Positions 23,299 through 55,636 of a stretch of 64,000 nucleotides of DNA are shown here, piece by piece. Made by a program: the position numbers and the translations under genes. The stretch's first letter is position 1. Every line of letters begins with the position of its first letter. Where the stretch lies: the IMG/VR virus record IMGVR_UViG_3300046692_000091, positions 124,001 through 188,000 of that record. One strand, given 5' to 3'. The notes under the pieces are model-generated. The model was not told the DNA's origin. It worked only from the letters and a program-made list of their open reading frames with translations, and did no database searches.

Positions 23299-23637
23299 AT
23301 GACCGCAAGTAATGTTGTAAAGATCCCGGTAATCTGCATGGGTGCAGAATCGAAATTCCTGACTAAGAAGACAGTTCAGCTCGAGAAGATCGTAAGCTGT
23401 CAATTGGTAGACGCATATGGCGTACAGATTAAGGATTATGTGGTAGCTAATGAAGCTCCTATTCCTAATCTGTACCAACGGACCATCTATAAGAAAGGTC
23501 TGGCAACATCCGAAAAGATTGGGTCGCTATTTGTTGATCAAGTAACAGGGTCTTATACTCTGAAGCTGTTAGATCCATTGGCTCGACCAGCAGGTGTTGA
23601 TATCCAACTTACCATCCAAACGAAGGAAGCCGCATGA
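23299..23637 (+). CDS. Hypothetical beta-rich protein
   Basis: 112 aa; ATGA-coupled to next gene. Confidence 0.75.
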   Translation: MTASNVVKIPVICMGAESKFLTKKTVQLEKIVSCQLVDAYGVQIKDYVVANEAPIPNLYQRTIYKKGLATSEKIGSLFVDQVTGSYTLKLLDPLARPAGVDIQLTIQTKEAA

Positions 23638-26718: not shown

Positions 26719-26916
26719 ATGGAAACATTAGTTGGAATTATAGCTGCAATCGCCATGGCCAGTGCAATTGCTTTACTGGTATTGGGGATCAACGCTCTAT
26801 GTTGGTGGGAAGCCTTTCTTCCCAAAACAAAGCGAAAAGTATTTATCAGTGCCTGTGTGTTGGGCACGATTGTATTTTTCAGTGTGCTTTGGTTTATTTG
26901 GCTCATGCACAACTAA
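26719..26916 (+). CDS. Small two-TM membrane protein (65 aa)
   Basis: METLVGII...; 1 nt after upstream stop. Confidence 0.6.
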   Translation: METLVGIIAAIAMASAIALLVLGINALCWWEAFLPKTKRKVFISACVLGTIVFFSVLWFIWLMHN

Positions 26917-26942: not shown

Positions 26943-26977
26943 TACTGTGAATTCATAAAGACCATTAGGGGCTACAA

Positions 26978-27718
26978 ATGCAAATCGAACAACGCGATAC
27001 CAACATGACCCGCACTATGATGGACGCTTTCTTCAGTTGGTTCGCGGCAAACGACATCAGCCGTATCCACGTTATTGTGGACGGCACCCTTTTTGACAGT
27101 AAGGCTTTCGTAGACGATATGAATGGTCTGTATCAGATCCGTTTGTCTATTGGCGCTGCTGCAGTTCGTGGTTTCGGTTATCATGAACATGGCTTCTCGT
27201 ACGGTTGCATGCGTCAAGGTGTTCATATCGACATGGACATTCCTTACGAAGCAGTGTTGGGCTTTGTTATCCCAACTGGTGAGAACACCGAAGTCATCTT
27301 CGAGGTTCCTAACCTGGAACGTCACCAAATGAAACTCGAACAACAGAAAGGTTTGTTGCCACAACTGGGTAACTTCGCTTTCGTTGATCATGAAGGTAAA
27401 GCACTGCCGGATGAAATGGTTCATGAGCTGATGCGTCAACTCGTTCCATCCAATGCGGCCAAAGCAATCGAAGCCGCTCCTTATGCCGTACATGGCATCG
27501 CCCCAGAGACCCAGGATGAGGAAGGCAATCAACTGCCAACCATCACTGACCTGATGACCCGTAAACCTCTGGCGCAGCGTCCTGCTAAGCCCCAGCCTAA
27601 AGAAGCTCAAGCACCATTGTTGAACTTCGGCAATGTAAGTGGTACACAACTTCCAGCCCCAAAACCAACCCGTGCCATCCCTGCAGGTTGGTCCGTAATC
27701 CAAGGAGGTAAAGCATGA
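26978..27718 (+). CDS. sspB: SspB-like ClpXP adaptor
   Basis: MDAFFSWFAAND / HVIVDGT / IRLSIGAAAV / DIPYEAVL track E. coli SspB RAFYEWLLDN / HLVVDVT / IVLNIAPRAV / SVPLAAVL; P/Q-rich linker; C-terminal SVIQGGKA. Confidence 0.75.
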   Translation: MQIEQRDTNMTRTMMDAFFSWFAANDISRIHVIVDGTLFDSKAFVDDMNGLYQIRLSIGAAAVRGFGYHEHGFSYGCMRQGVHIDMDIPYEAVLGFVIPTGENTEVIFEVPNLERHQMKLEQQKGLLPQLGNFAFVDHEGKALPDEMVHELMRQLVPSNAAKAIEAAPYAVHGIAPETQDEEGNQLPTITDLMTRKPLAQRPAKPQPKEAQAPLLNFGNVSGTQLPAPKPTRAIPAGWSVIQGGKA

Positions 27719-28428
27719 ACCCGTGTGACCAACTGGCGCATATCACGTGCCGTCGTAAATCCCCGCGCCTGGCTGAGATCTTCAAGAAGCTGGATGGGGA
27801 TTCGCATTTCCAGCAATTGGATATGTATGAACTGAATGACATGTTGTTCCGTGAACTAGCATGGATGCCAAGTATGGTATCGATGGATTCTGAAGAACTC
27901 TATCAGGTCAACATCCGCACTATCCCGATCGCTCGTTTCGAAGATGGTGGTCTCCGTGTACTGTCAATGGATACCCAAACCTTCTGGCCCAGTATGAATG
28001 ATGTACAATCGGAACATGCTGTTCTGCAAGACATGGTTCATGCAGCTATGGTTAAGCATGTAATGTCCTGGGGCCTACGAATCAAAGAACCAGAACTGCG
28101 TATGCCGGTGTACTTCTCATTCGATCAACTCCGTCAGAATCTGGACGCTGTTGTTGTAGGGGCTGGTTTGCACACACTGACTGACGAACTCCGTCGTGTG
28201 CCACGTAAAACCAATCACCTCACTATTAATGTGGTGTTGACGATTACACCATCATTGATGTACCAGATCCGTGACCAGTCTCGTGCACAGATCTACATCT
28301 GCGACAACAACTTGCAACCTATCAATAACTTTGAAGGTGTTGTTGATAATGGGAACGAAAGTTTCTTTGACTTCTTGCGGAAACATAGTTACGACAGTAG
28401 CGTAATGTTAATGCCAGGTCTGGAGTAA
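27715..28428 (+). CDS. Hypothetical protein
   Basis: 237 aa, ATGA-coupled to sspB. Confidence 0.8.
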   Translation: MNPCDQLAHITCRRKSPRLAEIFKKLDGDSHFQQLDMYELNDMLFRELAWMPSMVSMDSEELYQVNIRTIPIARFEDGGLRVLSMDTQTFWPSMNDVQSEHAVLQDMVHAAMVKHVMSWGLRIKEPELRMPVYFSFDQLRQNLDAVVVGAGLHTLTDELRRVPRKTNHLTINVVLTITPSLMYQIRDQSRAQIYICDNNLQPINNFEGVVDNGNESFFDFLRKHSYDSSVMLMPGLE

Positions 28429-28431
28429 CAA

Positions 28432-29814
28432 ATGCTTATTCAGGAAGTGTTAGGGTTATACCACAATGCAATAGAGATGCTCAGTTCGGGTGACTCAACA
28501 GTCAAAGGTTTCATGACGTTGGGTGTCATGGGTCTGTTGGGTTATTTGGGGCGTACGATACCCCAAACAATCTGGGCGTTCATCAAACGTAACACGATTT
28601 CATCGATGACTTTCACTCGCGCAGGTTCATATTCCATGGACATGCAGAACTACGTAGAGTTCATGCGTTGGTTCTCACAATCCAAGTGGGCTAAATATGA
28701 TCGCAATCGACGTGTAACATTCGATCGGAATGACCCAGCTTTTGGACCAGGTACTGGCTTCCACTGGTTTGTTTGGAAAGGTCGTTACTTCTGGTTTAAT
28801 GTTGTCCGTTTGAATTCCTCCGGTACCGATATCGAGAAAGAAGAATTCACACTGTATACATTCGGTCGTACCACTAAACCATTCGAAGAACTGGTGGAAG
28901 AGTTCCGTATCAAGCCATGCAAGAAATCGATACGTATCTATGCCCCATCGAATGACGGTTGGAACTATCAGGGGCGACTACGGTTGGACGCTGATGAAAC
29001 ACTGATCATCGATCCAGAAGTAGAGAAAGAGTTCTTTGGTTCTATCGACTGGTATCTGGCAAACGAACCATGGTACCGTAAACGTGGATTGGCTTATAAA
29101 CACACTGTCGTGTTGCATGGTCCACCTGGTACCGGTAAGACTTCGTTGATCAAACGTGCAGCCCGGAAGTACAAGCGGGATATTCACTTCCTGAACTTGG
29201 CTACCCATGGTCGTCAGTTGACTGATCTGATGGGTAAGTTGTCGGCTGGTGACATTCTGTGCATTGAAGACTTTGATGATGTCAAGTCGTTGCACCGTCG
29301 CACTGGTCCGAAGAAGATGGAAATCGGTGAACTGGACATCGGTTCCGATAAGAAACCAGAAGCGTTGTTGATGGACTGCGAGATTCAACTCAGTACCTTC
29401 CTCAACGTTCTGCAAGGCGTTGTAGAGCTCGATGATATCATTATCGTGCTGACTACTAACCACCTGGAACTGATCGATCCAGCGGTCTACCGTCCGTCCC
29501 GTGTGAACAAACTGATCGAAGTGCTACCTCTGAAAGATCCGGAAGTTAAGCGCTATATCGACACGATGTATGATAATCCTACTTACGATCGTAATGTAAT
29601 GTACCCAGACGTTCCAGCTTCTACCCTGGCTGGTATCTTCATGGAGCACCCGAACGATCACCTGGCTTTCATTGATAAGCTAGATTCGTTGGACGACAAA
29701 TACGTCGCGGAGAACTATGCTCTACAACCAGAGCCCCCGCGCCCACCTTCCAAGAAAAATAAGGACCCTTCTCCAATAGGAGGACAGGTTCTTGAAACCG
29801 TAGAGGCAGCGTAA
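28432..29814 (+). CDS. BCS1-like membrane-anchored AAA+ ATPase
   Basis: N-terminal TM; GPPGTGKTS, IEDFD, STFLNVLQG, TTNH, DPAVYRPSR. Confidence 0.85.
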   Translation: MLIQEVLGLYHNAIEMLSSGDSTVKGFMTLGVMGLLGYLGRTIPQTIWAFIKRNTISSMTFTRAGSYSMDMQNYVEFMRWFSQSKWAKYDRNRRVTFDRNDPAFGPGTGFHWFVWKGRYFWFNVVRLNSSGTDIEKEEFTLYTFGRTTKPFEELVEEFRIKPCKKSIRIYAPSNDGWNYQGRLRLDADETLIIDPEVEKEFFGSIDWYLANEPWYRKRGLAYKHTVVLHGPPGTGKTSLIKRAARKYKRDIHFLNLATHGRQLTDLMGKLSAGDILCIEDFDDVKSLHRRTGPKKMEIGELDIGSDKKPEALLMDCEIQLSTFLNVLQGVVELDDIIIVLTTNHLELIDPAVYRPSRVNKLIEVLPLKDPEVKRYIDTMYDNPTYDRNVMYPDVPASTLAGIFMEHPNDHLAFIDKLDSLDDKYVAENYALQPEPPRPPSKKNKDPSPIGGQVLETVEAA

Positions 29815-29815
29815 C

Positions 29816-30157
29816 ATGGATAATTTTGCACGTCACAACTTCAACGTCTACCCGGAAGAGATGACCTACCACAAAGATCGCTTCTTGCAAAATGATGCTG
29901 GTTGTGCGGTAGTTACATTCGTTGGGGCTTTTCATGGCGATACCATTCTGACGAATGAAGTCGAAGTGATTGCACGTGGTGTGGAACTGGGTAAGATCGC
30001 TCGGTTCCTGGTTCGTTCAGGTGATCAGGAAACCCATCTCGACATGGATCTGACAACCTGCCGTTATGAAGCAGAAAGCAATATCAAAACCAAACTGGGT
30101 GACGTCGTACTGGTGTTCACCGCGCACTACCCAACCGAAGAAAAGGAAGCTGCATGA
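29816..30157 (+). CDS. Hypothetical protein
   Basis: 113 aa; coupled to prs-like gene. Confidence 0.8.
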   Translation: MDNFARHNFNVYPEEMTYHKDRFLQNDAGCAVVTFVGAFHGDTILTNEVEVIARGVELGKIARFLVRSGDQETHLDMDLTTCRYEAESNIKTKLGDVVLVFTAHYPTEEKEAA

Positions 30158-31092
30158 TTCGCGTTCGTTATGGTTACAGTCATAGTTCTTCGACGATGCC
30201 TGTTGAAATGAAACACATGCCGGGTGGTGAACTCCACCCAACGCTTGACACGGATCACTTGAATGCCAGCGAGTACACCATCTACGCCGACACCAAGAGC
30301 TCGGATGATCTGTTTGGTATTGCTCTGGTAGCTAACGCTATCCGCCGTAATGCCGAAGTACCAATCAAAGCACTCTCTCTGGTAATTGGTTATGTGCCTT
30401 ATGCACGCCAAGACCGTATTGTTGGTGGTGAAGGTGAGGCACTATCGATCGAAGTGATGGCCGACTTCATCAACATGCTGAACTTCGATGCAGTGATCAT
30501 TGCAGATCCCCACAGCGATACAACTCCGGCTTTGATCCGTAATGCTAAGGTCATGTCCCAGGAAATGATCTTCAGTGAATTCCTGATCCGCGAAACGGCA
30601 GACTTCGATACCCGTGAGATTGCTTACGTGCCATCTGAGTACATCCTGGTTTCCCCAGATGCTGGTGCGATCAAGAAGACCGAGAAGCTGGCTACTAAGT
30701 TCGGCTTTAAAGGTGTAGCGTACGCTAACAAAACACGCAATACCCGTACCGGTAAGATCACTGGTTGTACTGTGGACCGATTGGTTTTGGATGGTGAACC
30801 AGCAATGATAAGTCAACTACAAGGCGAGAAGCTTTTAGTAGTTGACGATATCTGTGATGGTGGTTATACATTTATCCAATTGGCCGAAGTGTTGAATACC
30901 TACAGCCCAGCTAGTTTGGAACTGTACGTCACTCACGGTATCTTCTCTAAAGGTCTCGAGCCGTTGTATAAAGCGGGTTACACTCGTGTTGTTACTACCA
31001 ATGCTTATGGCATGGAAGGTAGCACTGAGCTGTATGCGCTTGAGAAAGAAGAAAAGAAAGCACTCAAATTCGTAAAAATCGATATTGCCTAA
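30154..31092 (+). CDS. prs: Ribose-phosphate pyrophosphokinase-like protein (candidate Adps of NARP1)
   Basis: YVPYARQDR, DPHS, VSPDAGA, VVDDICDGGYTF, THGIFS. Confidence 0.9.
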   Translation: MIRVRYGYSHSSSTMPVEMKHMPGGELHPTLDTDHLNASEYTIYADTKSSDDLFGIALVANAIRRNAEVPIKALSLVIGYVPYARQDRIVGGEGEALSIEVMADFINMLNFDAVIIADPHSDTTPALIRNAKVMSQEMIFSEFLIRETADFDTREIAYVPSEYILVSPDAGAIKKTEKLATKFGFKGVAYANKTRNTRTGKITGCTVDRLVLDGEPAMISQLQGEKLLVVDDICDGGYTFIQLAEVLNTYSPASLELYVTHGIFSKGLEPLYKAGYTRVVTTNAYGMEGSTELYALEKEEKKALKFVKIDIA

Positions 31093-31101
31093 GGATTCAA
31101 A

Positions 31102-32916
31102 ATGTCAATGTTTCTCAACGCTGGTACCGCTACTGACTTCTACAAACCTGGCCACGGTCCACTGTATCCAGAAGGCACTACCCGTAAGTACTCCAACTTC
31201 ACCCCACGCTCGGCGAAGAACTTCCTGCGTTCCAAAAGCTGCTCGGCTTACTATGATAACAAAGTAGTAAACTTCGGCCTGTATGGTACCTGGCAAGAAC
31301 TGGTTGACCTGTGGGATAAAACCTTCTTCCAAGTTTCGAAGAAGAAAGCAATCGCCTTCATCAAACGTCGTTTTGATAATGGCACTGGTCCTGATGTTAT
31401 CACAACTGCTCAAATCGCTGCACTCCACGATGTCGGCTTCCTGCCGGTAACTGTGTTGTCCATCGAAGAAGGTAACCGTGTCGATATCGGCATTCCTCTG
31501 TGGGTTATCTATAACTCCGAAGAATACCCAGAACACTACTGGCTGGTTAACTACCTGGAAACCATCACCAGTTCGTACAACTGGCAGTCGATCACCAACG
31601 CAACCATCGCCTACGAATATCGTCGTCTGTGCGAGATCTGGGCTGCTAAGACCTGTGATAACAATGACCACGTTAAAATCCAAGGTCATGACTTCTCGTT
31701 CCGTGGCATGCCTGGTCCAGAAGCTGCTGGTCGTTCTAACGCGGGCCACTTGGCTTCGTTCTGGGGTACTGATACTATCCCGGCAATCGATTACATCGAA
31801 CGCCTGTATAACGCCAACTCTGATAAAGAAGTCCTGGGTGTATCGGTTACTGCTACTGAACACGCCGTTGCTACTGCGAATATCCTGTCTCGCCTGAAGC
31901 ACAAGATCCGTGCTCTGCCTGCCGACACTGTTATCTCCGGTGAAATGATCGATCTGCTCAAACTCGAATGCGAGCGTGAGTACATCCTGGAAATCATCCT
32001 GGTAAAAGTGAAGAAGGGTATCATCTCCCTGGTTTGCGATTCCTTCGACTTCTGGAGTGTTATCGAACACGTACTGCCTTCGCTCCGTAAGGAAATCGAA
32101 AGCCGTATCGTGAACGAACTCGGTCTGGCTAAAGTAGTTGTACGTCCTGACTCGGGTAATCCGGTACACGTGATCTGTGGTTTCAAAATCATGGGTGAGT
32201 TCGCTGACATTGCTGCATTCTCGAAGCATGTCTACGACAACGGTACTTTCGAACTGGGTATGTACGAAGCTGTGAAGATTGGTGATGTTTACCATGAACT
32301 GCAGAATACTACTTGGACTAGCTGCTCTATCGAAGACTTCCTGGGTCGTGAGATGAAGCGGGTAGAAGCAATCGGTGCGATCGAATCCCTGTGGGAATCT
32401 TTCGGTGGTCACACTAACACCAAAGGCTATAAAGTACTGAACTCGTACATCGGTCTGATCTATGGTGACTCGATCACTGTTGAACGTACCGAACAGATCT
32501 TCCAACGTCTGGCTGATAAAGGCTTCGCTTCGTCGAACGTTGTTCTGGGTATCGGTTCGTTTACTTATCAGTACAACACTCGTGATACCTTCGGCATGGC
32601 CATGAAGGCAACTGCGTGTGAAGTGCAGGATGAACTGATCGAGCTGTACAAAGATCCGAAGACCGCTGCATCCAAGAAGTCCGCTAAAGGCTTCCTGCGT
32701 GTACTGAAAGACGAGAACGGCAAATATACACTCGAACAAGAAGTGGAAATGGATTGGAAAGATCTGTTCTACGGTTCGGGTGAACTGAAGCCTCTGTTCC
32801 ACAACGGTAAGTTCCAGCGTGCTGAACATTTCGGTGATGTACGTAGTCGCATTGACTCTACTTTCGTAGTAGCTAATGACGATGACGGTTTCGACCCAGT
32901 CGAAGAAGCGGCATAA
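31102..32916 (+). CDS. nadV: Nicotinamide phosphoribosyltransferase-like protein (candidate Namat of NARP1)
   Basis: TDFYKPGH, HDFSFRGM, F.GTDT, ATEH, DSFDFW, VRPDSG, LIYGDSIT, RDTFG.AMKAT. Confidence 0.92.
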   Translation: MSMFLNAGTATDFYKPGHGPLYPEGTTRKYSNFTPRSAKNFLRSKSCSAYYDNKVVNFGLYGTWQELVDLWDKTFFQVSKKKAIAFIKRRFDNGTGPDVITTAQIAALHDVGFLPVTVLSIEEGNRVDIGIPLWVIYNSEEYPEHYWLVNYLETITSSYNWQSITNATIAYEYRRLCEIWAAKTCDNNDHVKIQGHDFSFRGMPGPEAAGRSNAGHLASFWGTDTIPAIDYIERLYNANSDKEVLGVSVTATEHAVATANILSRLKHKIRALPADTVISGEMIDLLKLECEREYILEIILVKVKKGIISLVCDSFDFWSVIEHVLPSLRKEIESRIVNELGLAKVVVRPDSGNPVHVICGFKIMGEFADIAAFSKHVYDNGTFELGMYEAVKIGDVYHELQNTTWTSCSIEDFLGREMKRVEAIGAIESLWESFGGHTNTKGYKVLNSYIGLIYGDSITVERTEQIFQRLADKGFASSNVVLGIGSFTYQYNTRDTFGMAMKATACEVQDELIELYKDPKTAASKKSAKGFLRVLKDENGKYTLEQEVEMDWKDLFYGSGELKPLFHNGKFQRAEHFGDVRSRIDSTFVVANDDDGFDPVEEAA

Positions 32917-32918
32917 TC

Positions 32919-32944
32919 GGACGGGGACCTTCGGGTCCCCATCC
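32919..32944 (+). terminator. Intrinsic terminator
   Basis: ggggacc-ttcg-ggtcccc plus T tract. Confidence 0.85.
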
Positions 32945-32970
32945 TATTTTCTTTTTTGTCGGAGTAAACA

Positions 32971-33585
32971 ATGATCTGCTGTCAAAATTGTAATGTTGAT
33001 GCTGTTAGTCCTCAGCGTTCAGAAGTAAATGCATCCATCCGCTTTGATGCAACTGATGCCCCTAATCCAGCATTGATCGGCAAGAATCTCCGCTTGGTTA
33101 ATGGTACGTTGTTCACTCGTGATGGCGCAATGCCTAAAGGCGGCTTTCGTGTTGAGATGATTACTACTGGTGCAAAGCATCGTATCTCGATCTACCGCAT
33201 GACCTTACCTTTCGATGAGTTGATGCTGATCCTACAATTCGATGAAACGGTTGGTGAAGTACAAGTCAGACAGTTCGCAAATGTCGAACCACTGGTACAA
33301 CTCCATCTGGAGATGACCAAAGAATTCGTGGAAGAAAAACTCTACCAAGAACTAGCACCATTGGTATACCGTGTACCTTCACGTGCAGCTATGCTCCAAC
33401 TCTTCGAGCATCGTAAATTGTCAGGCCGTGTTCTGGAGGCAGCCGAAGTACAAATCCAAACCAATAACCGGACAGGTAACTGGCCGATGATGGCAATATT
33501 CCATCAGAATCTCCTCGGTGTTGAGACGCGAAATTCTCCTGTTATTAATATTCCTGATTGGAGAAATAACGCAGCTTGGCAATAA
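32971..33585 (+). CDS. Hypothetical protein
   Basis: 204 aa, SD ggag. Confidence 0.8.
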   Translation: MICCQNCNVDAVSPQRSEVNASIRFDATDAPNPALIGKNLRLVNGTLFTRDGAMPKGGFRVEMITTGAKHRISIYRMTLPFDELMLILQFDETVGEVQVRQFANVEPLVQLHLEMTKEFVEEKLYQELAPLVYRVPSRAAMLQLFEHRKLSGRVLEAAEVQIQTNNRTGNWPMMAIFHQNLLGVETRNSPVINIPDWRNNAAWQ

Positions 33586-33609: not shown

Positions 33610-35034
33610 ATGAAAGAATATTTGTCCATGCAGCAAGAAGTACTGGAACGAGGCGTGCCGAAAGGTGACCGCACTGGTACTGGTACTATTTCTTGCCCTG
33701 GTGTTAGTCGTGTATATGACATCAGCGATAATCGGTTGGCTGCAACGTCTACCAAAAAGATTCACATCAAGACAGGTCAGGTTGAAGAAGACTGGATGTT
33801 GTCAGGTGATACCCGACTGAAGTTCCTGAAAGACAACAACTGCAACATCTGGGACGAATGGGTTCTGAAAGGTACCGGTATCTATCGTAATCGTACGGTC
33901 AAAGAAATGCGTCGAGTTTATACTCGTAACCATTTCGGTTGGTCTAAACCAGTCGTTCTAGATATCGGTTGTGACCCAGAGAACACAGAAGTCTGGAATA
34001 AGGTTGCAGAAACAGAGGACTTCGAAGTCTGGGCATGGGACGTAACTAAAGGCATCGGCATTAAACCACATCATGGCATTCGGGATAAGTCCAAGGATAG
34101 TCTGAATTGGATGAACTGGCAAAACCCAGAAGATCCTATTTGGCTTCAGTTCTACTCTGCTCTGGGTATCTCTGATCTGGAAGTAATGGACGGAGAACTC
34201 GGTAAGGTATACGGGGCAATGTTCCGTAGTATCGAAGACACCCGTATCGATAGTGGTGGGGGTGTTAATGAGAAAGAATGGACAGACCGTGGATTCTCTT
34301 GGGAAGGTATGTTAGGTGATGGCCGATCGGTGTATACGCGTAAGATCGATCAGGTTGCTAAACTACTGTATGATCTGGAGCATAACCCAGATTCTCGTCG
34401 TTTGATTCTGTGTCCATGGAACCCAGCATATGTAGATGAACAAGCATTGCCTCCTTGCCATTCATTCATCCAGTTCTGGACGCGTGAGATGACTTCCGAG
34501 CAACGTTACCATGTCTATTGTAAGCAGTATGACCGTGAGCAAAAAGAGTTGCTTGACGACATTGCTAAACGTAGTCGTGCCGACATTTATACTGCGCATG
34601 CTCCATATCCGTTGTCATGCTTTGCTGAAGTCGACGACCGTGGTACTTTCTTCGATCATTATAAGCTGCATGCTTATCTAGATGAGCTTGATGTTCCACG
34701 TCGTGCTTTGACATGCATTGTTTATATGCGGTCTAACGATGTGTTCTTGGGTGCACCGTATAACCTCACGTTCTATTCTTCACTAACGCACAAGCTGGCT
34801 CACCAGTTTAACATGTACGGTGAGAAACTGGTTCACTTCGTAGGTGATGCACATATCTACCAGAACCATTTGGATCAAGTTGCCGAACAACAAGCTCGTA
34901 CACCTGACCGTGATATGCCTCGACTGAAGATCAATGTTCCGAAAGGTACTTCGATTCTCGACATGACGTTCCAAGATCTGGAAGTGATCGGTTATAACCC
35001 ACAGCCTGCTATTGAAGCACCTGTAGCTGTTTAA
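33610..35034 (+). CDS. thyA: Thymidylate synthase with two large insertions
   Basis: DRTGTGT, IWDEW, ELGKVYG, SRRLI...WNP, LPPCH, RSNDVFLGAPYN, GDAHIY.NH. Confidence 0.95.
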   Translation: MKEYLSMQQEVLERGVPKGDRTGTGTISCPGVSRVYDISDNRLAATSTKKIHIKTGQVEEDWMLSGDTRLKFLKDNNCNIWDEWVLKGTGIYRNRTVKEMRRVYTRNHFGWSKPVVLDIGCDPENTEVWNKVAETEDFEVWAWDVTKGIGIKPHHGIRDKSKDSLNWMNWQNPEDPIWLQFYSALGISDLEVMDGELGKVYGAMFRSIEDTRIDSGGGVNEKEWTDRGFSWEGMLGDGRSVYTRKIDQVAKLLYDLEHNPDSRRLILCPWNPAYVDEQALPPCHSFIQFWTREMTSEQRYHVYCKQYDREQKELLDDIAKRSRADIYTAHAPYPLSCFAEVDDRGTFFDHYKLHAYLDELDVPRRALTCIVYMRSNDVFLGAPYNLTFYSSLTHKLAHQFNMYGEKLVHFVGDAHIYQNHLDQVAEQQARTPDRDMPRLKINVPKGTSILDMTFQDLEVIGYNPQPAIEAPVAV

Positions 35035-35080: not shown

Positions 35081-35338
35081 ATGCAACAGAATATAATTGT
35101 AGCAGTAAGCTATCCGGTTGTAAGTAAAGACAGCGTAAAGTTTGTTCATTCAATCAACAATGATGAGGGTACGATTACCTTCGTCTCTGTCGATACTCCT
35201 GATAAAGCACAACTTTTTGGTGGCGAAGTAGGGGCGGTTGCAGAGTTCTTAAACTACCATGTTAAACCTAATCTGGAAAATACATGGAAGTTCAATTCTG
35301 TTGACATAAACAAAATCAAACCAGAGGAGGCAGCATGA
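35081..35338 (+). CDS. Hypothetical protein
   Basis: 85 aa, SD ggag. Confidence 0.8.
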   Translation: MQQNIIVAVSYPVVSKDSVKFVHSINNDEGTITFVSVDTPDKAQLFGGEVGAVAEFLNYHVKPNLENTWKFNSVDINKIKPEEAA

Positions 35339-38828: not shown

Positions 38829-39305
38829 GTGACAGATCCAAGACAGCAAGAAATAGATTGCATCGAACTCATGCGTGACCGGTTGATCAAAGAACCACAT
38901 AACTGGCGTGGTACTGTGTTGGAAGAATCCAGTTGGTACAAGCTGCTAGTGGGTGAACTGGATCTTACTGAGTTCACAGTAGCATTTCGCTACTTGCTCA
39001 GTTATTGGGATAAACGTCGACTTAATGTTGGCGGCATCATGAAAATGGAAACCTATATTCGCTTGTGGAATTGCCTATCGGATGACGCTAAACAACAATG
39101 GCCTGATATCGATATCAAGGTGCATCAGTTTGTCGGTCGTCCAGAATGTGCGATCCATGTCCTGCAGGATATAATGCGTGGCCCTACTGACATCAGTACT
39201 TACCTGGATCAATTTCTGCGCGATGATGTCGGTTCTACCTTCCGCTGGGTACAAGGTATCCAAAGAGCAAAAGTAACACGCCAACTCAATAAGGAAGCAG
39301 CATGA
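38829..39305 (+). CDS. Hypothetical protein
   Basis: 158 aa, GTG start. Confidence 0.75.
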   Translation: MTDPRQQEIDCIELMRDRLIKEPHNWRGTVLEESSWYKLLVGELDLTEFTVAFRYLLSYWDKRRLNVGGIMKMETYIRLWNCLSDDAKQQWPDIDIKVHQFVGRPECAIHVLQDIMRGPTDISTYLDQFLRDDVGSTFRWVQGIQRAKVTRQLNKEAA

Positions 39306-39703
39306 GTAATCAACCTGTAACGCGTCGTATTTATAACCTGGTTCGCATCAAAGACAAACAAGGTAAAGCTTACACAGGCTTTGTTGTTGGTCTAGCCGAG
39401 AAGTGTGGTGATAGTGAACTCGATGGTCAAGCATTCTATGCCACCGAAGATCTCAGTGGTTGGACGGATGAACAGTTCGCTTTAGTCAATAAGAAACTGA
39501 AGGCCATCTGGGACTGTGCTGTCGATTATCTCGTATGGGATTGCACTCATGGCGATAATGAGCAATATATTTCCCGCATTTGTCCTGGTGATCTATTGTT
39601 GGTCATTGACGACAAAGTTGTTCCGGTTATCGGGGAACTACGTGAACTCATGTTTGAATATGAGCACTACACAGTTGATGCCCCTCTGGAGAAAGCAGCA
39701 TAA
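39302..39703 (+). CDS. Hypothetical protein
   Basis: 133 aa; RICPGDLLL resembles TIRPGDFLV of 35335. Confidence 0.8.
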   Translation: MSNQPVTRRIYNLVRIKDKQGKAYTGFVVGLAEKCGDSELDGQAFYATEDLSGWTDEQFALVNKKLKAIWDCAVDYLVWDCTHGDNEQYISRICPGDLLLVIDDKVVPVIGELRELMFEYEHYTVDAPLEKAA

Positions 39704-39975
39704 TGGCTAAGGCAGTCCGACATAAAAGTGGTGTGTGGATGCAACCAGGTACAGAAGGCTGGGAAAAGTATCATAACCCACCTGTAATAATGAAAGTACC
39801 TAATGCTCCACTCTCACTCGATCAGTACATGGACGAGCTTGATAAGAAGTGGCGTAAAGCCGAAGGGCGTGTTCCTGTTAAAGAACTGGATGAACGGGGA
39901 CTGATGCTAGAAGGCCGTATTCCATGGGACCCTGTTCGACTGAAACAACTCACCGAAGAACGGTTGGCTGCATGA
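39703..39975 (+). CDS. Hypothetical protein
   Basis: 90 aa, TAATG-coupled. Confidence 0.75.
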   Translation: MAKAVRHKSGVWMQPGTEGWEKYHNPPVIMKVPNAPLSLDQYMDELDKKWRKAEGRVPVKELDERGLMLEGRIPWDPVRLKQLTEERLAA

Positions 39976-55206: not shown

Positions 55207-55499
55207 GTGAATATGTAATCGAAATCATCCGTGGTCGTGATCACATTTATCTGTCTCGTAAAGAGAGCGGTAAAGCCAATGTCACACCGCAAGAACGCAA
55301 CGCTATTACTTTTGAATCATCAACTGCAGCTAAGCTAGTGATTGATGCATTGATGGAAAAGCCCACCTCAGACATGCGTAAGCTGTTGAAGGTTCAAGAA
55401 GACTGGAATCGTCCAGTCCAACTGTTGGCCCGTAAGCGGTTGGGTAATAGTCACATGACTACCAACGCCCGTATGTATCTATTTAAGGAAGCCGCATAA
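55203..55499 (+). CDS. Hypothetical protein
   Basis: 98 aa, coupled. Confidence 0.75.
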   Translation: MSEYVIEIIRGRDHIYLSRKESGKANVTPQERNAITFESSTAAKLVIDALMEKPTSDMRKLLKVQEDWNRPVQLLARKRLGNSHMTTNARMYLFKEAA

Positions 55500-55636
55500 T
55501 GTGGAAATTTACTTCGTTTGATGGACTCGTTTGGCGCACCCCTAAACAAATGAATCTGGTCGCCGCTGTCGCTCAGTGGACAATTTCCACTGGTCTTGGC
55601 GAAGCAGATATCAAAGAAATCATTAACATCCACTAA
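55499..55636 (+). CDS. Small hypothetical protein (45 aa)
   Basis: TAATG-coupled; MWKFTSFDGLVWRTPKQ... Confidence 0.6.
   Translation: MWKFTSFDGLVWRTPKQMNLVAAVAQWTISTGLGEADIKEIINIH

What the first reader, a model, noticed from the sequence alone, without database searches (positions are those of the whole stretch)
32866..32916. The Nampt-like enzyme ends in a genomically encoded ssrA-like tag
Seen: the C-terminus is ...VVANDDDGFDPVEEAA-stop, followed directly by a terminator, so SD overlap cannot explain it. Known: gammaproteobacterial ssrA tags read AANDE/DNYALAA, with AND..Y bound by SspB and terminal AA by ClpX. Inference: ANDDDGF plus terminal AA is a bipartite SspB/ClpX degron, and an SspB gene lies upstream in the same operon. 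This suggests a timer on NAD+ reconstitution. The acidic residues before AA may weaken direct ClpX binding and make degradation adaptor-dependent.
Basis: partly seen in the sequence, partly recalled or inferred. Interest (0 to 1): 0.75.

Follow-up and report, generated by a model that had tools for sequence, protein, structure and literature searches.

The report
ssrA-like tail on phage Namat
A jumbo phage's NAD+-rebuilding enzyme ends in a floppy, acidic 15-residue tail finishing in Ala-Ala that resembles the bacterial ssrA degradation tag, and a co-folding model docks it into an SspB-type protease adaptor encoded in the same gene cluster, which hints but does not prove that the phage sets the enzyme's lifetime through the host ClpXP protease.

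Summary
The 604-aa Nampt-family gene (31102-32916) ends ...VVANDDDGFDPVEEAA-stop and an intrinsic terminator follows. A true SspB homologue (26978-27718) heads the same tightly packed six-gene cluster. Its family matches solved SspB by profile, and its model matches them by fold. The enzyme is best read as Namat of the NARP1 pathway: an Adps-like gene sits next to it and the phage has no NMNAT. Residues 590-604 are the only low-confidence part of a confident model and lie outside the family profile.

A co-folding model puts residues 583-599 onto the phage SspB-like domain and leaves the last five free. The score is 0.72 against 0.01 for the best control.

The case stays incomplete:
- Close relatives with the same SspB-led cluster have no tail, so co-occurrence cannot test the idea.
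- Sister clades keep a core (F-D-P/L-x-E) but do not end in Ala-Ala.
- The Asn-to-aromatic spacing is one residue longer than in ssrA.
- Glu replaces the ssrA Leu before Ala-Ala.
- Seven other proteins of this phage end in EAA, and all seven stops overlap or abut an ATG.

No degradation data exist, and the "timer" is speculation. Verdict: a plausible adaptor-docking tail with a weak degron, a new variant of a known kind.

The parts
26978..27718 (+). SspB-family adaptor homologue (246 aa): N-terminal SspB fold (about residues 10-115), disordered P/Q/A/K-rich linker, conserved C-terminal ...WSVIQGGKA segment
   Evidence: Homologues are named stringent starvation protein B or carry PF04386. Profile against PDB SspB chains E 2e-7. 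10 of 16 family members hit Pfam SspB. AF2 plus Foldseek: top 13 hits are SspB. hhalign to pf16 SspB 96.6%.
27715..28428 (+). 237-aa protein of unknown function, conserved in the cluster
   Evidence: No Pfam or PHROG hit. Same position in relatives.
28432..29814 (+). AAA+ ATPase with a BCS1_N-like N-terminal domain (460 aa), ends ...ETVEAA
   Evidence: Pfam BCS1_N 4e-12 and AAA 5e-12. phrog_7485 2e-110.
29816..30157 (+). 113-aa protein of unknown function, ends ...EEKEAA through an aaGGAAgctgcATGA junction
30154..31092 (+). PRPP-synthetase-like gene, read as Adps (ADPR-PP synthetase) of NARP1
   Evidence: Pfam Pribosyltran. phrog_619 1e-73. Pairing with a Nampt-like gene defines NARP1 (PMC12774641, PMC13586617). 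No NMNAT in the genome.
31102..32916 (+). Nampt-family enzyme, read as Namat (nicotinamide ADPR-transferase), 604 aa
   Evidence: Pfam NAPRTase 2.5e-34. phrog_448 3e-169 over residues 3-587. Best PDB sequence hits 9w5x/9w5w at E 1e-104 against about 1e-44 for the many Nampt entries that rank below them. AF2 mean pLDDT 92.
32869..32913 (+). Disordered acidic C-terminal tail, residues 590-604 (VANDDDGFDPVEEAA)
   Evidence: The only segment with pLDDT below 50. Beyond the family profile. Absent in tail-less relatives that stop at ...TFA or ...EFA.
32872..32898 (+). Conserved linear motif A-N-D-D-D-G-F-D-P (residues 591-599). Family form: A-[NDG]-[DEN]-x(2-3)-F-D-[PLQ], followed by x-E
   Evidence: Tail comparison across clades. 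Lies inside the predicted contact range 583-599 with the phage SspB-like domain.
32908..32913 (+). Terminal Ala-Ala codons (GCG GCA), candidate weak ClpX C-motif-1 element
   Evidence: Ala-Ala-COO- is the main ClpX determinant of the ssrA tag (PMC7652416). Penultimate-Ala codon is GCG or GCC among AA-ending relatives; the terminal Ala is GCA, GCC or GCT across clades.
32923..32957 (+). Intrinsic terminator (7-bp GC-rich stem, TTCG loop, T-run) closing the cluster
   Evidence: Stop codon plus hairpin are identical in 7 phages whose Namat proteins are only 70-95% identical to the window's. Fold.
26849..26867 (+). Terminator-like hairpin upstream of the SspB-like gene, probable upstream boundary of the transcription unit
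   Evidence: Genes from 26978 to 32916 are separated by -4 to +9 nt.

Best explanation
The gene encodes the Namat enzyme of a NARP1 NAD+-reconstitution pair in a roughly 315-kb Pseudomonas-type jumbo phage from a rhizosphere metagenome. Its last 15 residues are a disordered acidic extension that works as a short linear docking motif. The A-N-D...F-D-P stretch binds the substrate groove of the phage's own SspB-like adaptor, encoded at the head of the same cluster. That adaptor's C-terminal LRVV-like segment tethers the complex to the N-domain of host ClpX. The free C-terminal -EAA then acts as a weak C-motif-1 (ssrA-type) degron that works only when tethered, so Namat turnover depends on the adaptor.

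Shown: the sequence, the terminator, the disorder in the model, the SspB homology, the cluster. Predicted by a model: the docking. Inferred only: engagement by ClpX, degradation, and any timing role.
For: - Tail sequence and terminator.
- The tail is the only low-confidence segment of a pLDDT-92 model and lies outside the family profile.
- SspB homology by profile, Pfam on family members, hhalign and fold.
- SspB-like architecture: folded domain, disordered linker, conserved C-terminal ...PHLRVIQGGKA. This compares with ...PTLRVVK in the canonical SspB of pf16 and matches the published SspB architecture (PMC9963277).
- Co-folding score 0.72 against a best control of 0.01; the mark was reached by 58 of 80 solved complexes and 2 of 110 mismatched pairs. 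Contacts cover Namat 583-599 and include SspB-like residues 49-64, which align with the conserved QIVLNI/PRAV segment. The last five residues are free.
- A motif core F-D-[PLQ]-x-E, and a near-constant 23-24 residues from the last helix to the C-terminus in 11 of 13 tails, persist across tail-bearing clades 66-96% identical.
- The terminal Ala is kept with different codons (GCA, GCC, GCT) across clades.
- SspB-like genes lie within 10 kb of Namat in ten related phage records and right beside it in Phabio, Viktualia and G006 (locus L013) despite rearrangement.
- The tail is unique in this proteome.
- The host-type Pseudomonas tag reads AANDDNYALAA (bioRxiv 10.1101/2023.06.19.545564, found).
- A chimallivirus SspB homologue is cytoplasmic (bioRxiv 10.1101/2023.02.24.529968).
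Against: - The co-fold may pass from memory of solved SspB-ssrA complexes.
- Residues 583-589 of the predicted interface, and possibly up to 592, belong to the last helix (577-592) of the folded enzyme and would not be free.
- The job differed from the tool's calibration: a peptide partner and my own alignment.
- N-to-aromatic spacing is +5 here, not +4 as in ssrA, and varies from +3 to +5 in close relatives.
- Glu stands where ssrA has Leu.
- The Psa21, D6 and RVTF4 clades keep the motif but end EVA, VEA, VVE, AGI, IEN or VAN.
- At least five related lineages keep the SspB-like gene, two shown in the same cluster, with a tail-less Namat. The tail is therefore dispensable.
- Seven other proteins of this phage end in EAA as a by-product of gene junctions, so -EAA alone is probably not a strong degron.
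- The last codons sit in a DNA module (stop plus terminator) that is identical across 7 phages, so DNA- or RNA-level conservation or recombination could carry them.
- No experimental data of any kind.
Confidence: 0.4

Rival explanations
1. The tail is a neutral, fast-evolving disordered extension. Its likeness to ssrA comes from an acidic, Ala-rich composition, and its last codons ride along with a highly conserved stop-plus-terminator DNA module. It has no role in proteolysis or adaptor binding.
For: - The tail is present or absent among close relatives with otherwise identical clusters.
- Register and terminal residues vary.
- TAA plus the terminator hairpin is identical in 7 phages, and GC(G/C)GCA directly precedes it.
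- GAAGAAGC can pair with the terminator's U-tract in the MFE fold.
- Half of 120 homologues end in Ala anyway.
Against: - An F-D-[PLQ]-x-E core and a near-constant tail length persist over 66-96% identity, which is unusual for a neutral tail.
- The terminal Ala uses different codons in different clades.
- The co-fold score is far above its controls.
- The RNA fold is no better than shuffles, z = -1.1.
- The motif occurs only once in the proteome.
Confidence: 0.3
2. The tail docks to the phage SspB-like protein, or to another cluster protein such as the BCS1-like AAA+ ATPase or Adps, but the outcome is not degradation of Namat. Possible outcomes are scaffolding of the NARP1 enzymes, sequestration or regulation of the adaptor by a pseudo-substrate, or protection of the tail.
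For: - The docking prediction.
- The conserved SspB-like/X/AAA+/Y/Adps/Namat cluster and SspB-Namat adjacency in rearranged genomes.
- Sister clades keep the motif without Ala-Ala.
- A phage has no obvious reason to destroy its own counter-defence enzyme.
Against: - The SspB family keeps a ClpX-tether-like C-terminus, which points to delivery.
- SpbetaL1 Namat and Adps do not form a stable complex (PMC12774641).
- No partner other than the SspB-like protein could be tested, because only one co-fold job was allowed.
Confidence: 0.15
3. The tail mimics the host ssrA tag and is read directly by host SspB and ClpXP (or ClpAP). The phage adaptor is not needed, or it competes with host SspB.
For: - The ANDD tetrapeptide is identical to the P. 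aeruginosa tag AANDDNYALAA, and the tail ends in Ala-Ala.
- A 95%-identical relative (P0014) reads ANDDGF, in the exact ssrA register.
- Some Namats of phages without an SspB-like gene end in canonical -LLAA (RP12).
Against: - The window's own register is +1, and Phe replaces Tyr.
- Glu before Ala-Ala should raise KM for ClpX, since the antepenultimate Leu contributes modestly (PMC7652416).
- Host SspB was not modelled here.
- The host is known only by inference from relatives.
Confidence: 0.1

Closest known systems
tmRNA-encoded ssrA tag with the SspB adaptor and ClpXP (E. coli AANDENYALAA; P. aeruginosa AANDDNYALAA)
   Same: A bipartite C-terminal peptide: an upstream A-N-D...aromatic stretch for the adaptor and a terminal Ala-Ala-COO- for the ClpX pore. 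It is disordered and sits at the very C-terminus (PMC8512704, PMC7652416, PMC9963277).
   Different: It is encoded in the gene, not added by trans-translation, and the phage has no tmRNA. It is 15 residues rather than 11. The aromatic residue is Phe at +5 from Asn rather than Tyr at +4. Glu-Glu precedes Ala-Ala in place of Ala-Leu. The presumed adaptor is a phage paralogue about 20% identical to cellular SspB.
Genome-encoded SspB/ClpXP substrates such as the RseA N-terminal fragment ending in VAA (my own knowledge of Flynn et al. 2004, a reference listed in PMC5587285; PDB 1yfn listed)
   Same: A natural protein whose C-terminal Ala-Ala is read by ClpX, while a separate non-ssrA peptide docks in the SspB groove.
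   Different: RseA's degron is exposed only after site-2 cleavage, whereas here it is the primary translation end. Adaptor and substrate are both phage-encoded and share a gene cluster.
Engineered adaptor-dependent tags (the DAS / DAS+4 type; from my own knowledge, not checked here)
   Same: A weakened ClpX-binding end plus an intact adaptor-binding part and extra spacing makes degradation depend on SspB.
   Different: Those are synthetic. Whether -EAA behaves like -DAS has not been measured.
Phage-encoded SspB homologues: Pseudomonas phage pf16 gp18 (PMC5587285) and Erwinia chimallivirus RAY gp039 (bioRxiv 10.1101/2023.02.24.529968)
   Same: Phage SspB-like proteins are already reported, and RAY gp039 is cytoplasmic. 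pf16 also carries a Namat homologue.
   Different: Neither of those two papers names a client protein; in the library, the only paper pairing SspB with any of the terms jumbo phage, Namat, NadV or chimallin was that RAY preprint. pf16 SspB is host-like (128 aa, ends LRVVK). The family here is longer and more divergent, and it is syntenic with NARP1.
NARP1 (Adps + Namat) phage NAD+ reconstitution pathway (bioRxiv 10.1101/2024.02.11.579819; PMC12774641; PMC13586617)
   Same: An adjacent PRPS-like gene and Nampt-like gene, no NMNAT in the genome, and the best PDB sequence matches (9w5x/9w5w, 9ke8) score far above the many Nampt entries ranked below them.
   Different: A term search of the Namat structure paper turned up no C-terminal extension or regulated turnover. 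About 110 extra residues relative to the roughly 490-aa solved proteins are mostly internal insertions.

Membership tests
ClpX C-motif-1 (ssrA-type) C-terminal degron | Ala-Ala with a free alpha-carboxylate at the extreme C-terminus | tested here: met
   ...VEEAA-TAA. Determinant described in PMC7652416.
ClpX C-motif-1 (ssrA-type) C-terminal degron | Hydrophobic antepenultimate residue (Leu in ssrA), which contributes modestly to KM | tested here: not met
   Glu602. Relatives have E, K, R, D, Q, L, M or V at this position.
ClpX C-motif-1 (ssrA-type) C-terminal degron | Unstructured, accessible terminus | tested here: met
   pLDDT below 50 only for residues 590-604 in a pLDDT-92 model. This is a prediction, not a measurement.
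ClpX C-motif-1 (ssrA-type) C-terminal degron | ClpXP-dependent degradation that is lost on changing AA to DD | not testable with these tools
   Needs in vitro or in vivo degradation assays.
SspB-binding segment of ssrA (AANDENY) | A-A-N-D start with Asn at position 3 | tested here: met
   V-A-N-D at 589-592. ANDD is identical to the P. aeruginosa tag. Relatives read AANS, AGND, AAVND or ADE.
SspB-binding segment of ssrA (AANDENY) | Aromatic anchor four residues after the Asn | tested here: not met
   Phe597 is +5 from Asn592. The 95%-identical P0014 has +4, Psa21 has +3.
SspB-binding segment of ssrA (AANDENY) | Binds the SspB substrate groove | tested here: inconclusive
   Co-fold with the phage SspB-like domain scores 0.72 against 0.01 for the best control, with contacts at 583-599. 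A model only, possibly from memory of solved complexes. Host SspB was not tested.
SspB adaptor family (PF04386), for ORF 26978-27718 | N-terminal SspB substrate-binding fold | tested here: met
   The single sequence misses Pfam, so it is a divergent member.
SspB adaptor family (PF04386), for ORF 26978-27718 | Disordered linker followed by a short C-terminal ClpX N-domain-binding segment (LRVVK-like) | tested here: inconclusive
   The linker is low-confidence (most of 124-221 has pLDDT below 60, with 124-136, 152-176 and 215-221 below 50). Family members end ...PHLRVIQGGKA or ...HLTLIQGGKA, but the window's copy ends ...AGWSVIQGGKA. The canonical pf16 SspB ends ...PTLRVVK. Binding to ClpX was not tested.
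NARP1 Namat | Nampt-family fold next to a PRPS-like Adps gene, in a genome without NMNAT | tested here: met
   Pathway defined in PMC12774641 and PMC13586617.
NARP1 Namat | Adenine 'selectivity clamp' conferring ADPR-PP specificity | not tested
   Described in PMC12774641. I did not map the clamp residues.

The most novel reading that the evidence does not exclude
A phage encodes both halves of a proteolytic control circuit for its own counter-defence enzyme. One half is a divergent SspB adaptor. The other is a genome-encoded bipartite tag (adaptor-docking motif plus a weak Ala-Ala degron) on Namat. Host ClpXP would then remove the NAD+-reconstitution enzyme in an adaptor-dependent, programmable way. 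The conserved linkage of SspB-like genes to NARP1 in jumbo phages would reflect this circuit.
Probability: 0.25. Interest if true: 0.75.

Novelty: new variant of a known kind. Interest (0 to 1): 0.6.

Why it matters
Phage SspB homologues have been noticed before (pf16, RAY), but no client has been named. NARP1 enzymes have been studied only as catalysts. If the tail is a docking and degron signal for the phage's own adaptor, three things follow:
- It would give phage SspB proteins a first concrete substrate.
- It would show that phages regulate an anti-defence enzyme after translation through a host AAA+ protease.
- It would provide a natural, adaptor-dependent degron for Pseudomonas.

The test is simple: a peptide fused to GFP, with and without one phage gene. 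If it fails, the finding reduces to an ordinary disordered extension on a known enzyme.

Tried and rejected
- **Pfam on the single SspB-like sequence and a six-frame Pfam SspB search of the genome.** These gave nothing above threshold.
- **SD or start-overlap as the cause of -EAA.** True for at least 9 of the 16 AA-ending ORFs, but not for this gene.
Every tail-bearing Namat whose genome was searched lies in a phage with an SspB-like gene (the one exception is a 17%-complete fragment), but so do tail-less ones, two of them in the identical cluster. The test has no power. The tree leaves tail-bearing and tail-less lineages in an unresolved polytomy.
- **An RNA-structure explanation for the last codons.** The MFE fold pairs GAAGAAGC with the U-tract, but the fold is no better than shuffles and GCGGCA stays unpaired.
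- **A phage tmRNA, ClpP or ClpX.** None found.
- **Other proteins carrying the motif.** None in this genome, and none in neighbours of tail-less relatives.
- **RNA-seq support for the operon.** Only metagenomic DNA runs hold the sequence.
- **Published SspB groove contacts.** I could not retrieve residue-level contacts, so I could not verify residue by residue that the predicted interface is the ssrA groove.
Full report
**1. What is at the coordinates**

The window is bases 124001-188000 of a 314.8-kb virus record that is held in a rhizosphere metagenome. Its nearest named relatives are the Pseudomonas jumbo phages Psa21, D6 and RVTF4.

ORF 31102-32916 (+) encodes a 604-aa NAPRTase/Nampt-family protein ending ...STFVVANDDDGFDPVEEAA. 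The finding's coordinates 32866-32916 are exactly the last 16 codons plus TAA. A GC-rich hairpin at 32923-32940 with a T-run follows, and the next ORF starts at 32971.

In this genome 16 of 424 ORFs end in AA (about 2.9 expected) and 8 end in EAA. At least 9 of the 16 come from junctions such as aaGGAAgcNgcATGA, where the stop overlaps or abuts the next start. The Namat ending does not.

**2. Which enzyme it is**

The gene directly upstream (30154-31092) is PRPP-synthetase-like. The genome has no NMNAT-type domain. The best solved-structure matches by sequence (9w5x/9w5w at E 1e-104, 9ke8 at 5e-89) score far above the many Nampt entries ranked below them (about 1e-44). A PRPS-like Adps next to a Nampt-like Namat defines the NARP1 NAD+-reconstitution pathway (PMC12774641, PMC13586617, bioRxiv 10.1101/2024.02.11.579819). 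I therefore read the pair as Adps plus Namat. The clamp residues that define ADPR-PP specificity were not mapped.

**3. The tail as a structural object**

An AF2 model built on 52 homologues has mean pLDDT 92.2. The only segment below 50 is 590-604, just after the last helix (577-592). The PHROG family profile ends near residue 587. Tail-less relatives stop at ...TFA or ...EFA, which corresponds to F588-V589. The tail is thus a 15-residue disordered, acidic appendage (net charge -6, the joint lowest 15-residue C-terminal charge in the proteome).

**4. The SspB gene**

On its own, ORF 26978-27718 gets no Pfam hit, and a six-frame Pfam SspB scan of the genome finds only a sub-threshold hit elsewhere. 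Other evidence settles the question:
- Its homologues include proteins named stringent starvation protein B or carrying PF04386.
- A 16-member profile hits solved SspB chains at E 2e-7 to 7e-6.
- Ten of the 16 members hit Pfam SspB.
- hhalign to the canonical SspB of phage pf16 gives 96.6% probability.
- The 13 best PDB matches of its AF2 model are all SspB, TM up to 0.76.

The architecture matches the published one: a folded domain, a disordered region and a short ClpX-binding end (PMC9963277). The linker is low-confidence. The family ends in a conserved ...PHL(R/T)(V/L)IQGGKA, compared with ...PTLRVVK in pf16 SspB. The window's own copy reads ...AGWSVIQGGKA, which is less canonical.

Genes from 26978 to 32916 are separated by -4 to +9 nt and are flanked by terminator-like hairpins at 26849-26867 and 32923-32940. 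One transcription unit is likely, but no RNA data exist. The phage has no ClpP, ClpX zinc domain or tmRNA.

**5. Does the tail dock on the adaptor?**

I co-folded a dimer of the SspB-like N-domain (residues 1-125, 14-row alignment) with Namat 575-604.
- The score was 0.72 in three runs, against 0.01 for the best of three controls.
- In the tool's calibration the mark was reached by 58 of 80 solved complexes and 2 of 110 mismatched pairs.
- The confident contacts are Namat 583-599, leaving VEEAA free.
- On the adaptor the contacts include residues 49-64. These align with the conserved GQIVLNI/PRAV segment of canonical SspB.

- SspB-ssrA complexes are solved, so the pass may reflect memory of a similar complex.
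- Residues 583-589, and possibly up to 592, are part of the last helix in the full enzyme.
- The job differs from the tool's calibration set.
- A model score is not a measure of affinity.

**6. Comparative evidence**

Among 120 homologues and 20 or more loci, the closest relatives (87-95% identical) read VANDDGFDQEADAA, AANSDDGFDPVEEAA, AGNDDGFDQEQEAA and VANDDDGFDPIEEAA.

Other tail-bearing relatives read:

| Relative | Tail |
|---|---|
| Psa21 | PADTAAVNDGFEVA |
| D6 clade | IADEMEEFDLEELVVEA and variants ending VVE, AGI, IEN |
| RVTF4 | IALDMANFDPEELSVAN |
| P0020 | IQREFAPEVEEAA |
| L008 | IARESFFTELKEAA |

Three things are conserved:
- an A-[ND]-[DE] start;
- an F-D-[PLQ]-x-E core;
- a near-constant 23-24 residues from the last helix to the end, in 11 of the 13 tails.

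Three things are not conserved:
- the N-to-F spacing, which runs from +3 to +5 (P0014 has the exact ssrA register, the window has +1);
- the terminal Ala-Ala;
- the tail itself.

P0019, P0023, P0022, P0026, P0031 and the PA1C group lack the tail. P0019 and P0026 sit in the identical SspB-like/X/AAA+/Y/Adps/Namat cluster, and PA1C also has an SspB-like gene. A tree built without the last 25 residues leaves tail-bearing and tail-less lineages in an unresolved polytomy. The tail is therefore dispensable, and the co-occurrence test cannot discriminate.

Two observations favour a functional link between the adaptor and NARP1. The SspB-like gene lies within 10 kb of Namat in ten related phage records. 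It sits immediately downstream of Namat in the rearranged genomes of Phabio, Viktualia and G006 (locus L013).

**7. The terminal Ala-Ala**

Across the 120 best homologues, 58 end in Ala and 21 end in Ala-Ala. Ala frequency is 7.8% overall and 12.6% in the preceding ten residues. The endings include RLRAA, LLAA (RP12), KKAA, REAA, QAA, MAA and VAA, and 14 of 56 clusters at 80% identity hold an AA-ending member.

This is a family-level bias, and its cause is open. It could be helix-end packing or a recurrent ClpX signal.

In the window's clade the stop codon and terminator hairpin are identical in seven phages whose Namats are only 70-95% identical to the window's, and GC(G/C)GCA directly precedes them. 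DNA-level conservation or modular exchange may therefore carry the last codons. Against a purely nucleic-acid explanation, the terminal Ala is encoded by GCA, GCC or GCT in different clades, and the RNA fold gives GCGGCA no pairing role.

Seven other proteins of this phage end in -EAA, and all seven stops overlap or abut an ATG. So -EAA alone is probably a weak signal or none. That fits adaptor dependence, and it equally fits no degron at all.

**8. Mechanism and weights**

- **Most likely, about 0.4.** The tail is a docking peptide for the phage SspB-like adaptor and, in this lineage, also carries a weak ssrA-type end. Namat is then delivered to host ClpXP.
- **Neutral tail, about 0.3.** It accounts for the patchy distribution and the conserved DNA module. 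It does not account for the conserved core and length or for the co-fold.
- **Docking without degradation, about 0.15.** It accounts for the sister clades that lack Ala-Ala.
- **Direct mimicry of the host tag, about 0.1.** It rests on ANDD identity to the P. aeruginosa tag AANDDNYALAA.

A 'timer on NAD+ reconstitution' is untested speculation.

**9. Novelty**

Phage SspB homologues are known (pf16 gp18, PMC5587285; RAY gp039, which is cytoplasmic, bioRxiv 10.1101/2023.02.24.529968), and NARP1 is known. In the library, the only paper pairing SspB with any of the terms jumbo phage, Namat, NadV or chimallin was the RAY preprint, which names no client for gp039, and a term search of the Namat structure paper turned up no C-terminal extension.

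If real, this is a new variant of the SspB/ssrA/ClpXP scheme, with the tag written in the gene and the adaptor supplied by the phage. It can be tested directly with a GFP fusion and one phage gene.

Noticed in passing
window 23620-23637, 29800-29820, 30140-30157, 35321-35338, 39288-39305, 39689-39706, 55485-55502 (and G000:C1:15700-15720): A recurrent gene-junction design, aaGGAAgcNgcATGA (or ...gcaTAATG). It combines a Shine-Dalgarno sequence, a spacer and a stop/start overlap. It makes 7 of the phage's 8 -EAA endings, plus an -EKAA one, by-products of translational coupling. It accounts for most of the 16 AA endings, against 2.9 expected.
   Followed up: yes
window 26978-32916; L002, L003, L042, L043, L045, L046: A six-gene cluster (SspB-like / 237-aa unknown / BCS1_N-type AAA+ ATPase / about 113-aa unknown / Adps / Namat) is conserved in relatives down to about 70% Namat identity, whether or not Namat has a tail. 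In Phabio, Viktualia and G006 (locus L013) the SspB-like gene lies immediately downstream of Namat instead. What the SspB-like protein, the AAA+ ATPase and the two unknown proteins do alongside NARP1 is open.
   Followed up: partly
P0014-P0133 (homologues of window 31102-32916): The family has a strong bias to a C-terminal Ala: 58 of 120 homologues end in Ala and 21 end in Ala-Ala. Ralstonia phage RP12/RP31 ends in ...TLLAA, the same last three residues as ssrA, and RP12 has no SspB-like gene. The cause is unknown.
   Followed up: partly
window 31105-32829 (-) and 26972-27703 (-): Long antisense ORFs (574 and 243 aa) mirror the Namat and SspB-like genes codon for codon. They are shadows. These two genes almost completely avoid TTA, CTA and TCA (1 in 604 codons and 0 in 246, against a genome mean of 26.8 per 1000). 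Only 15 of 151 long genes share this trait, which suggests strong codon optimisation or a distinct origin for both genes.
   Followed up: partly
window 32914-32957; L006, L008, L012, L042-L044: The TAA stop and the terminator hairpin with its immediate flanks (TAATCGGACGGGGACCTTCGGGTCCCCATCCT) are identical in seven phages whose Namat proteins are only 70-95% identical to the window's. The T-run that follows is identical in the four phages where it was aligned. The terminator is more conserved than the coding sequence next to it.
   Followed up: partly
window 33610-35034; L045 10123-12618: The thymidylate synthase here is 474 aa, and Pfam matches it in two stretches (the best spans 308 residues against only 168 profile positions), which suggests an insertion. 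In the relative L045 the gene is split into 373-aa and 72-aa pieces by a GIY-YIG / I-TevI-like homing endonuclease ORF, reminiscent of the T4 td intron.
   Followed up: no
window 32971-33585: The 204-aa ORF after the terminator has no family hit. It begins M-x-C-C (MICCQNC here, MSCC or MGCC in relatives). This is a conserved N-terminal Cys-Cys motif of unknown meaning.
   Followed up: no
G000:C1:255414-256595 (outside the window; L047 415-1596): A second protein has a very acidic tail ending in Ala-Ala (...TTESSYEEDQAA) with no start overlap. It has no Pfam or PHROG hit and is a possible second candidate of the same kind.
   Followed up: partly
G000:C1:201596-208110 (outside the window): A cluster of 11 tRNA genes on the minus strand. 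No tmRNA anywhere in the genome.
   Followed up: yes
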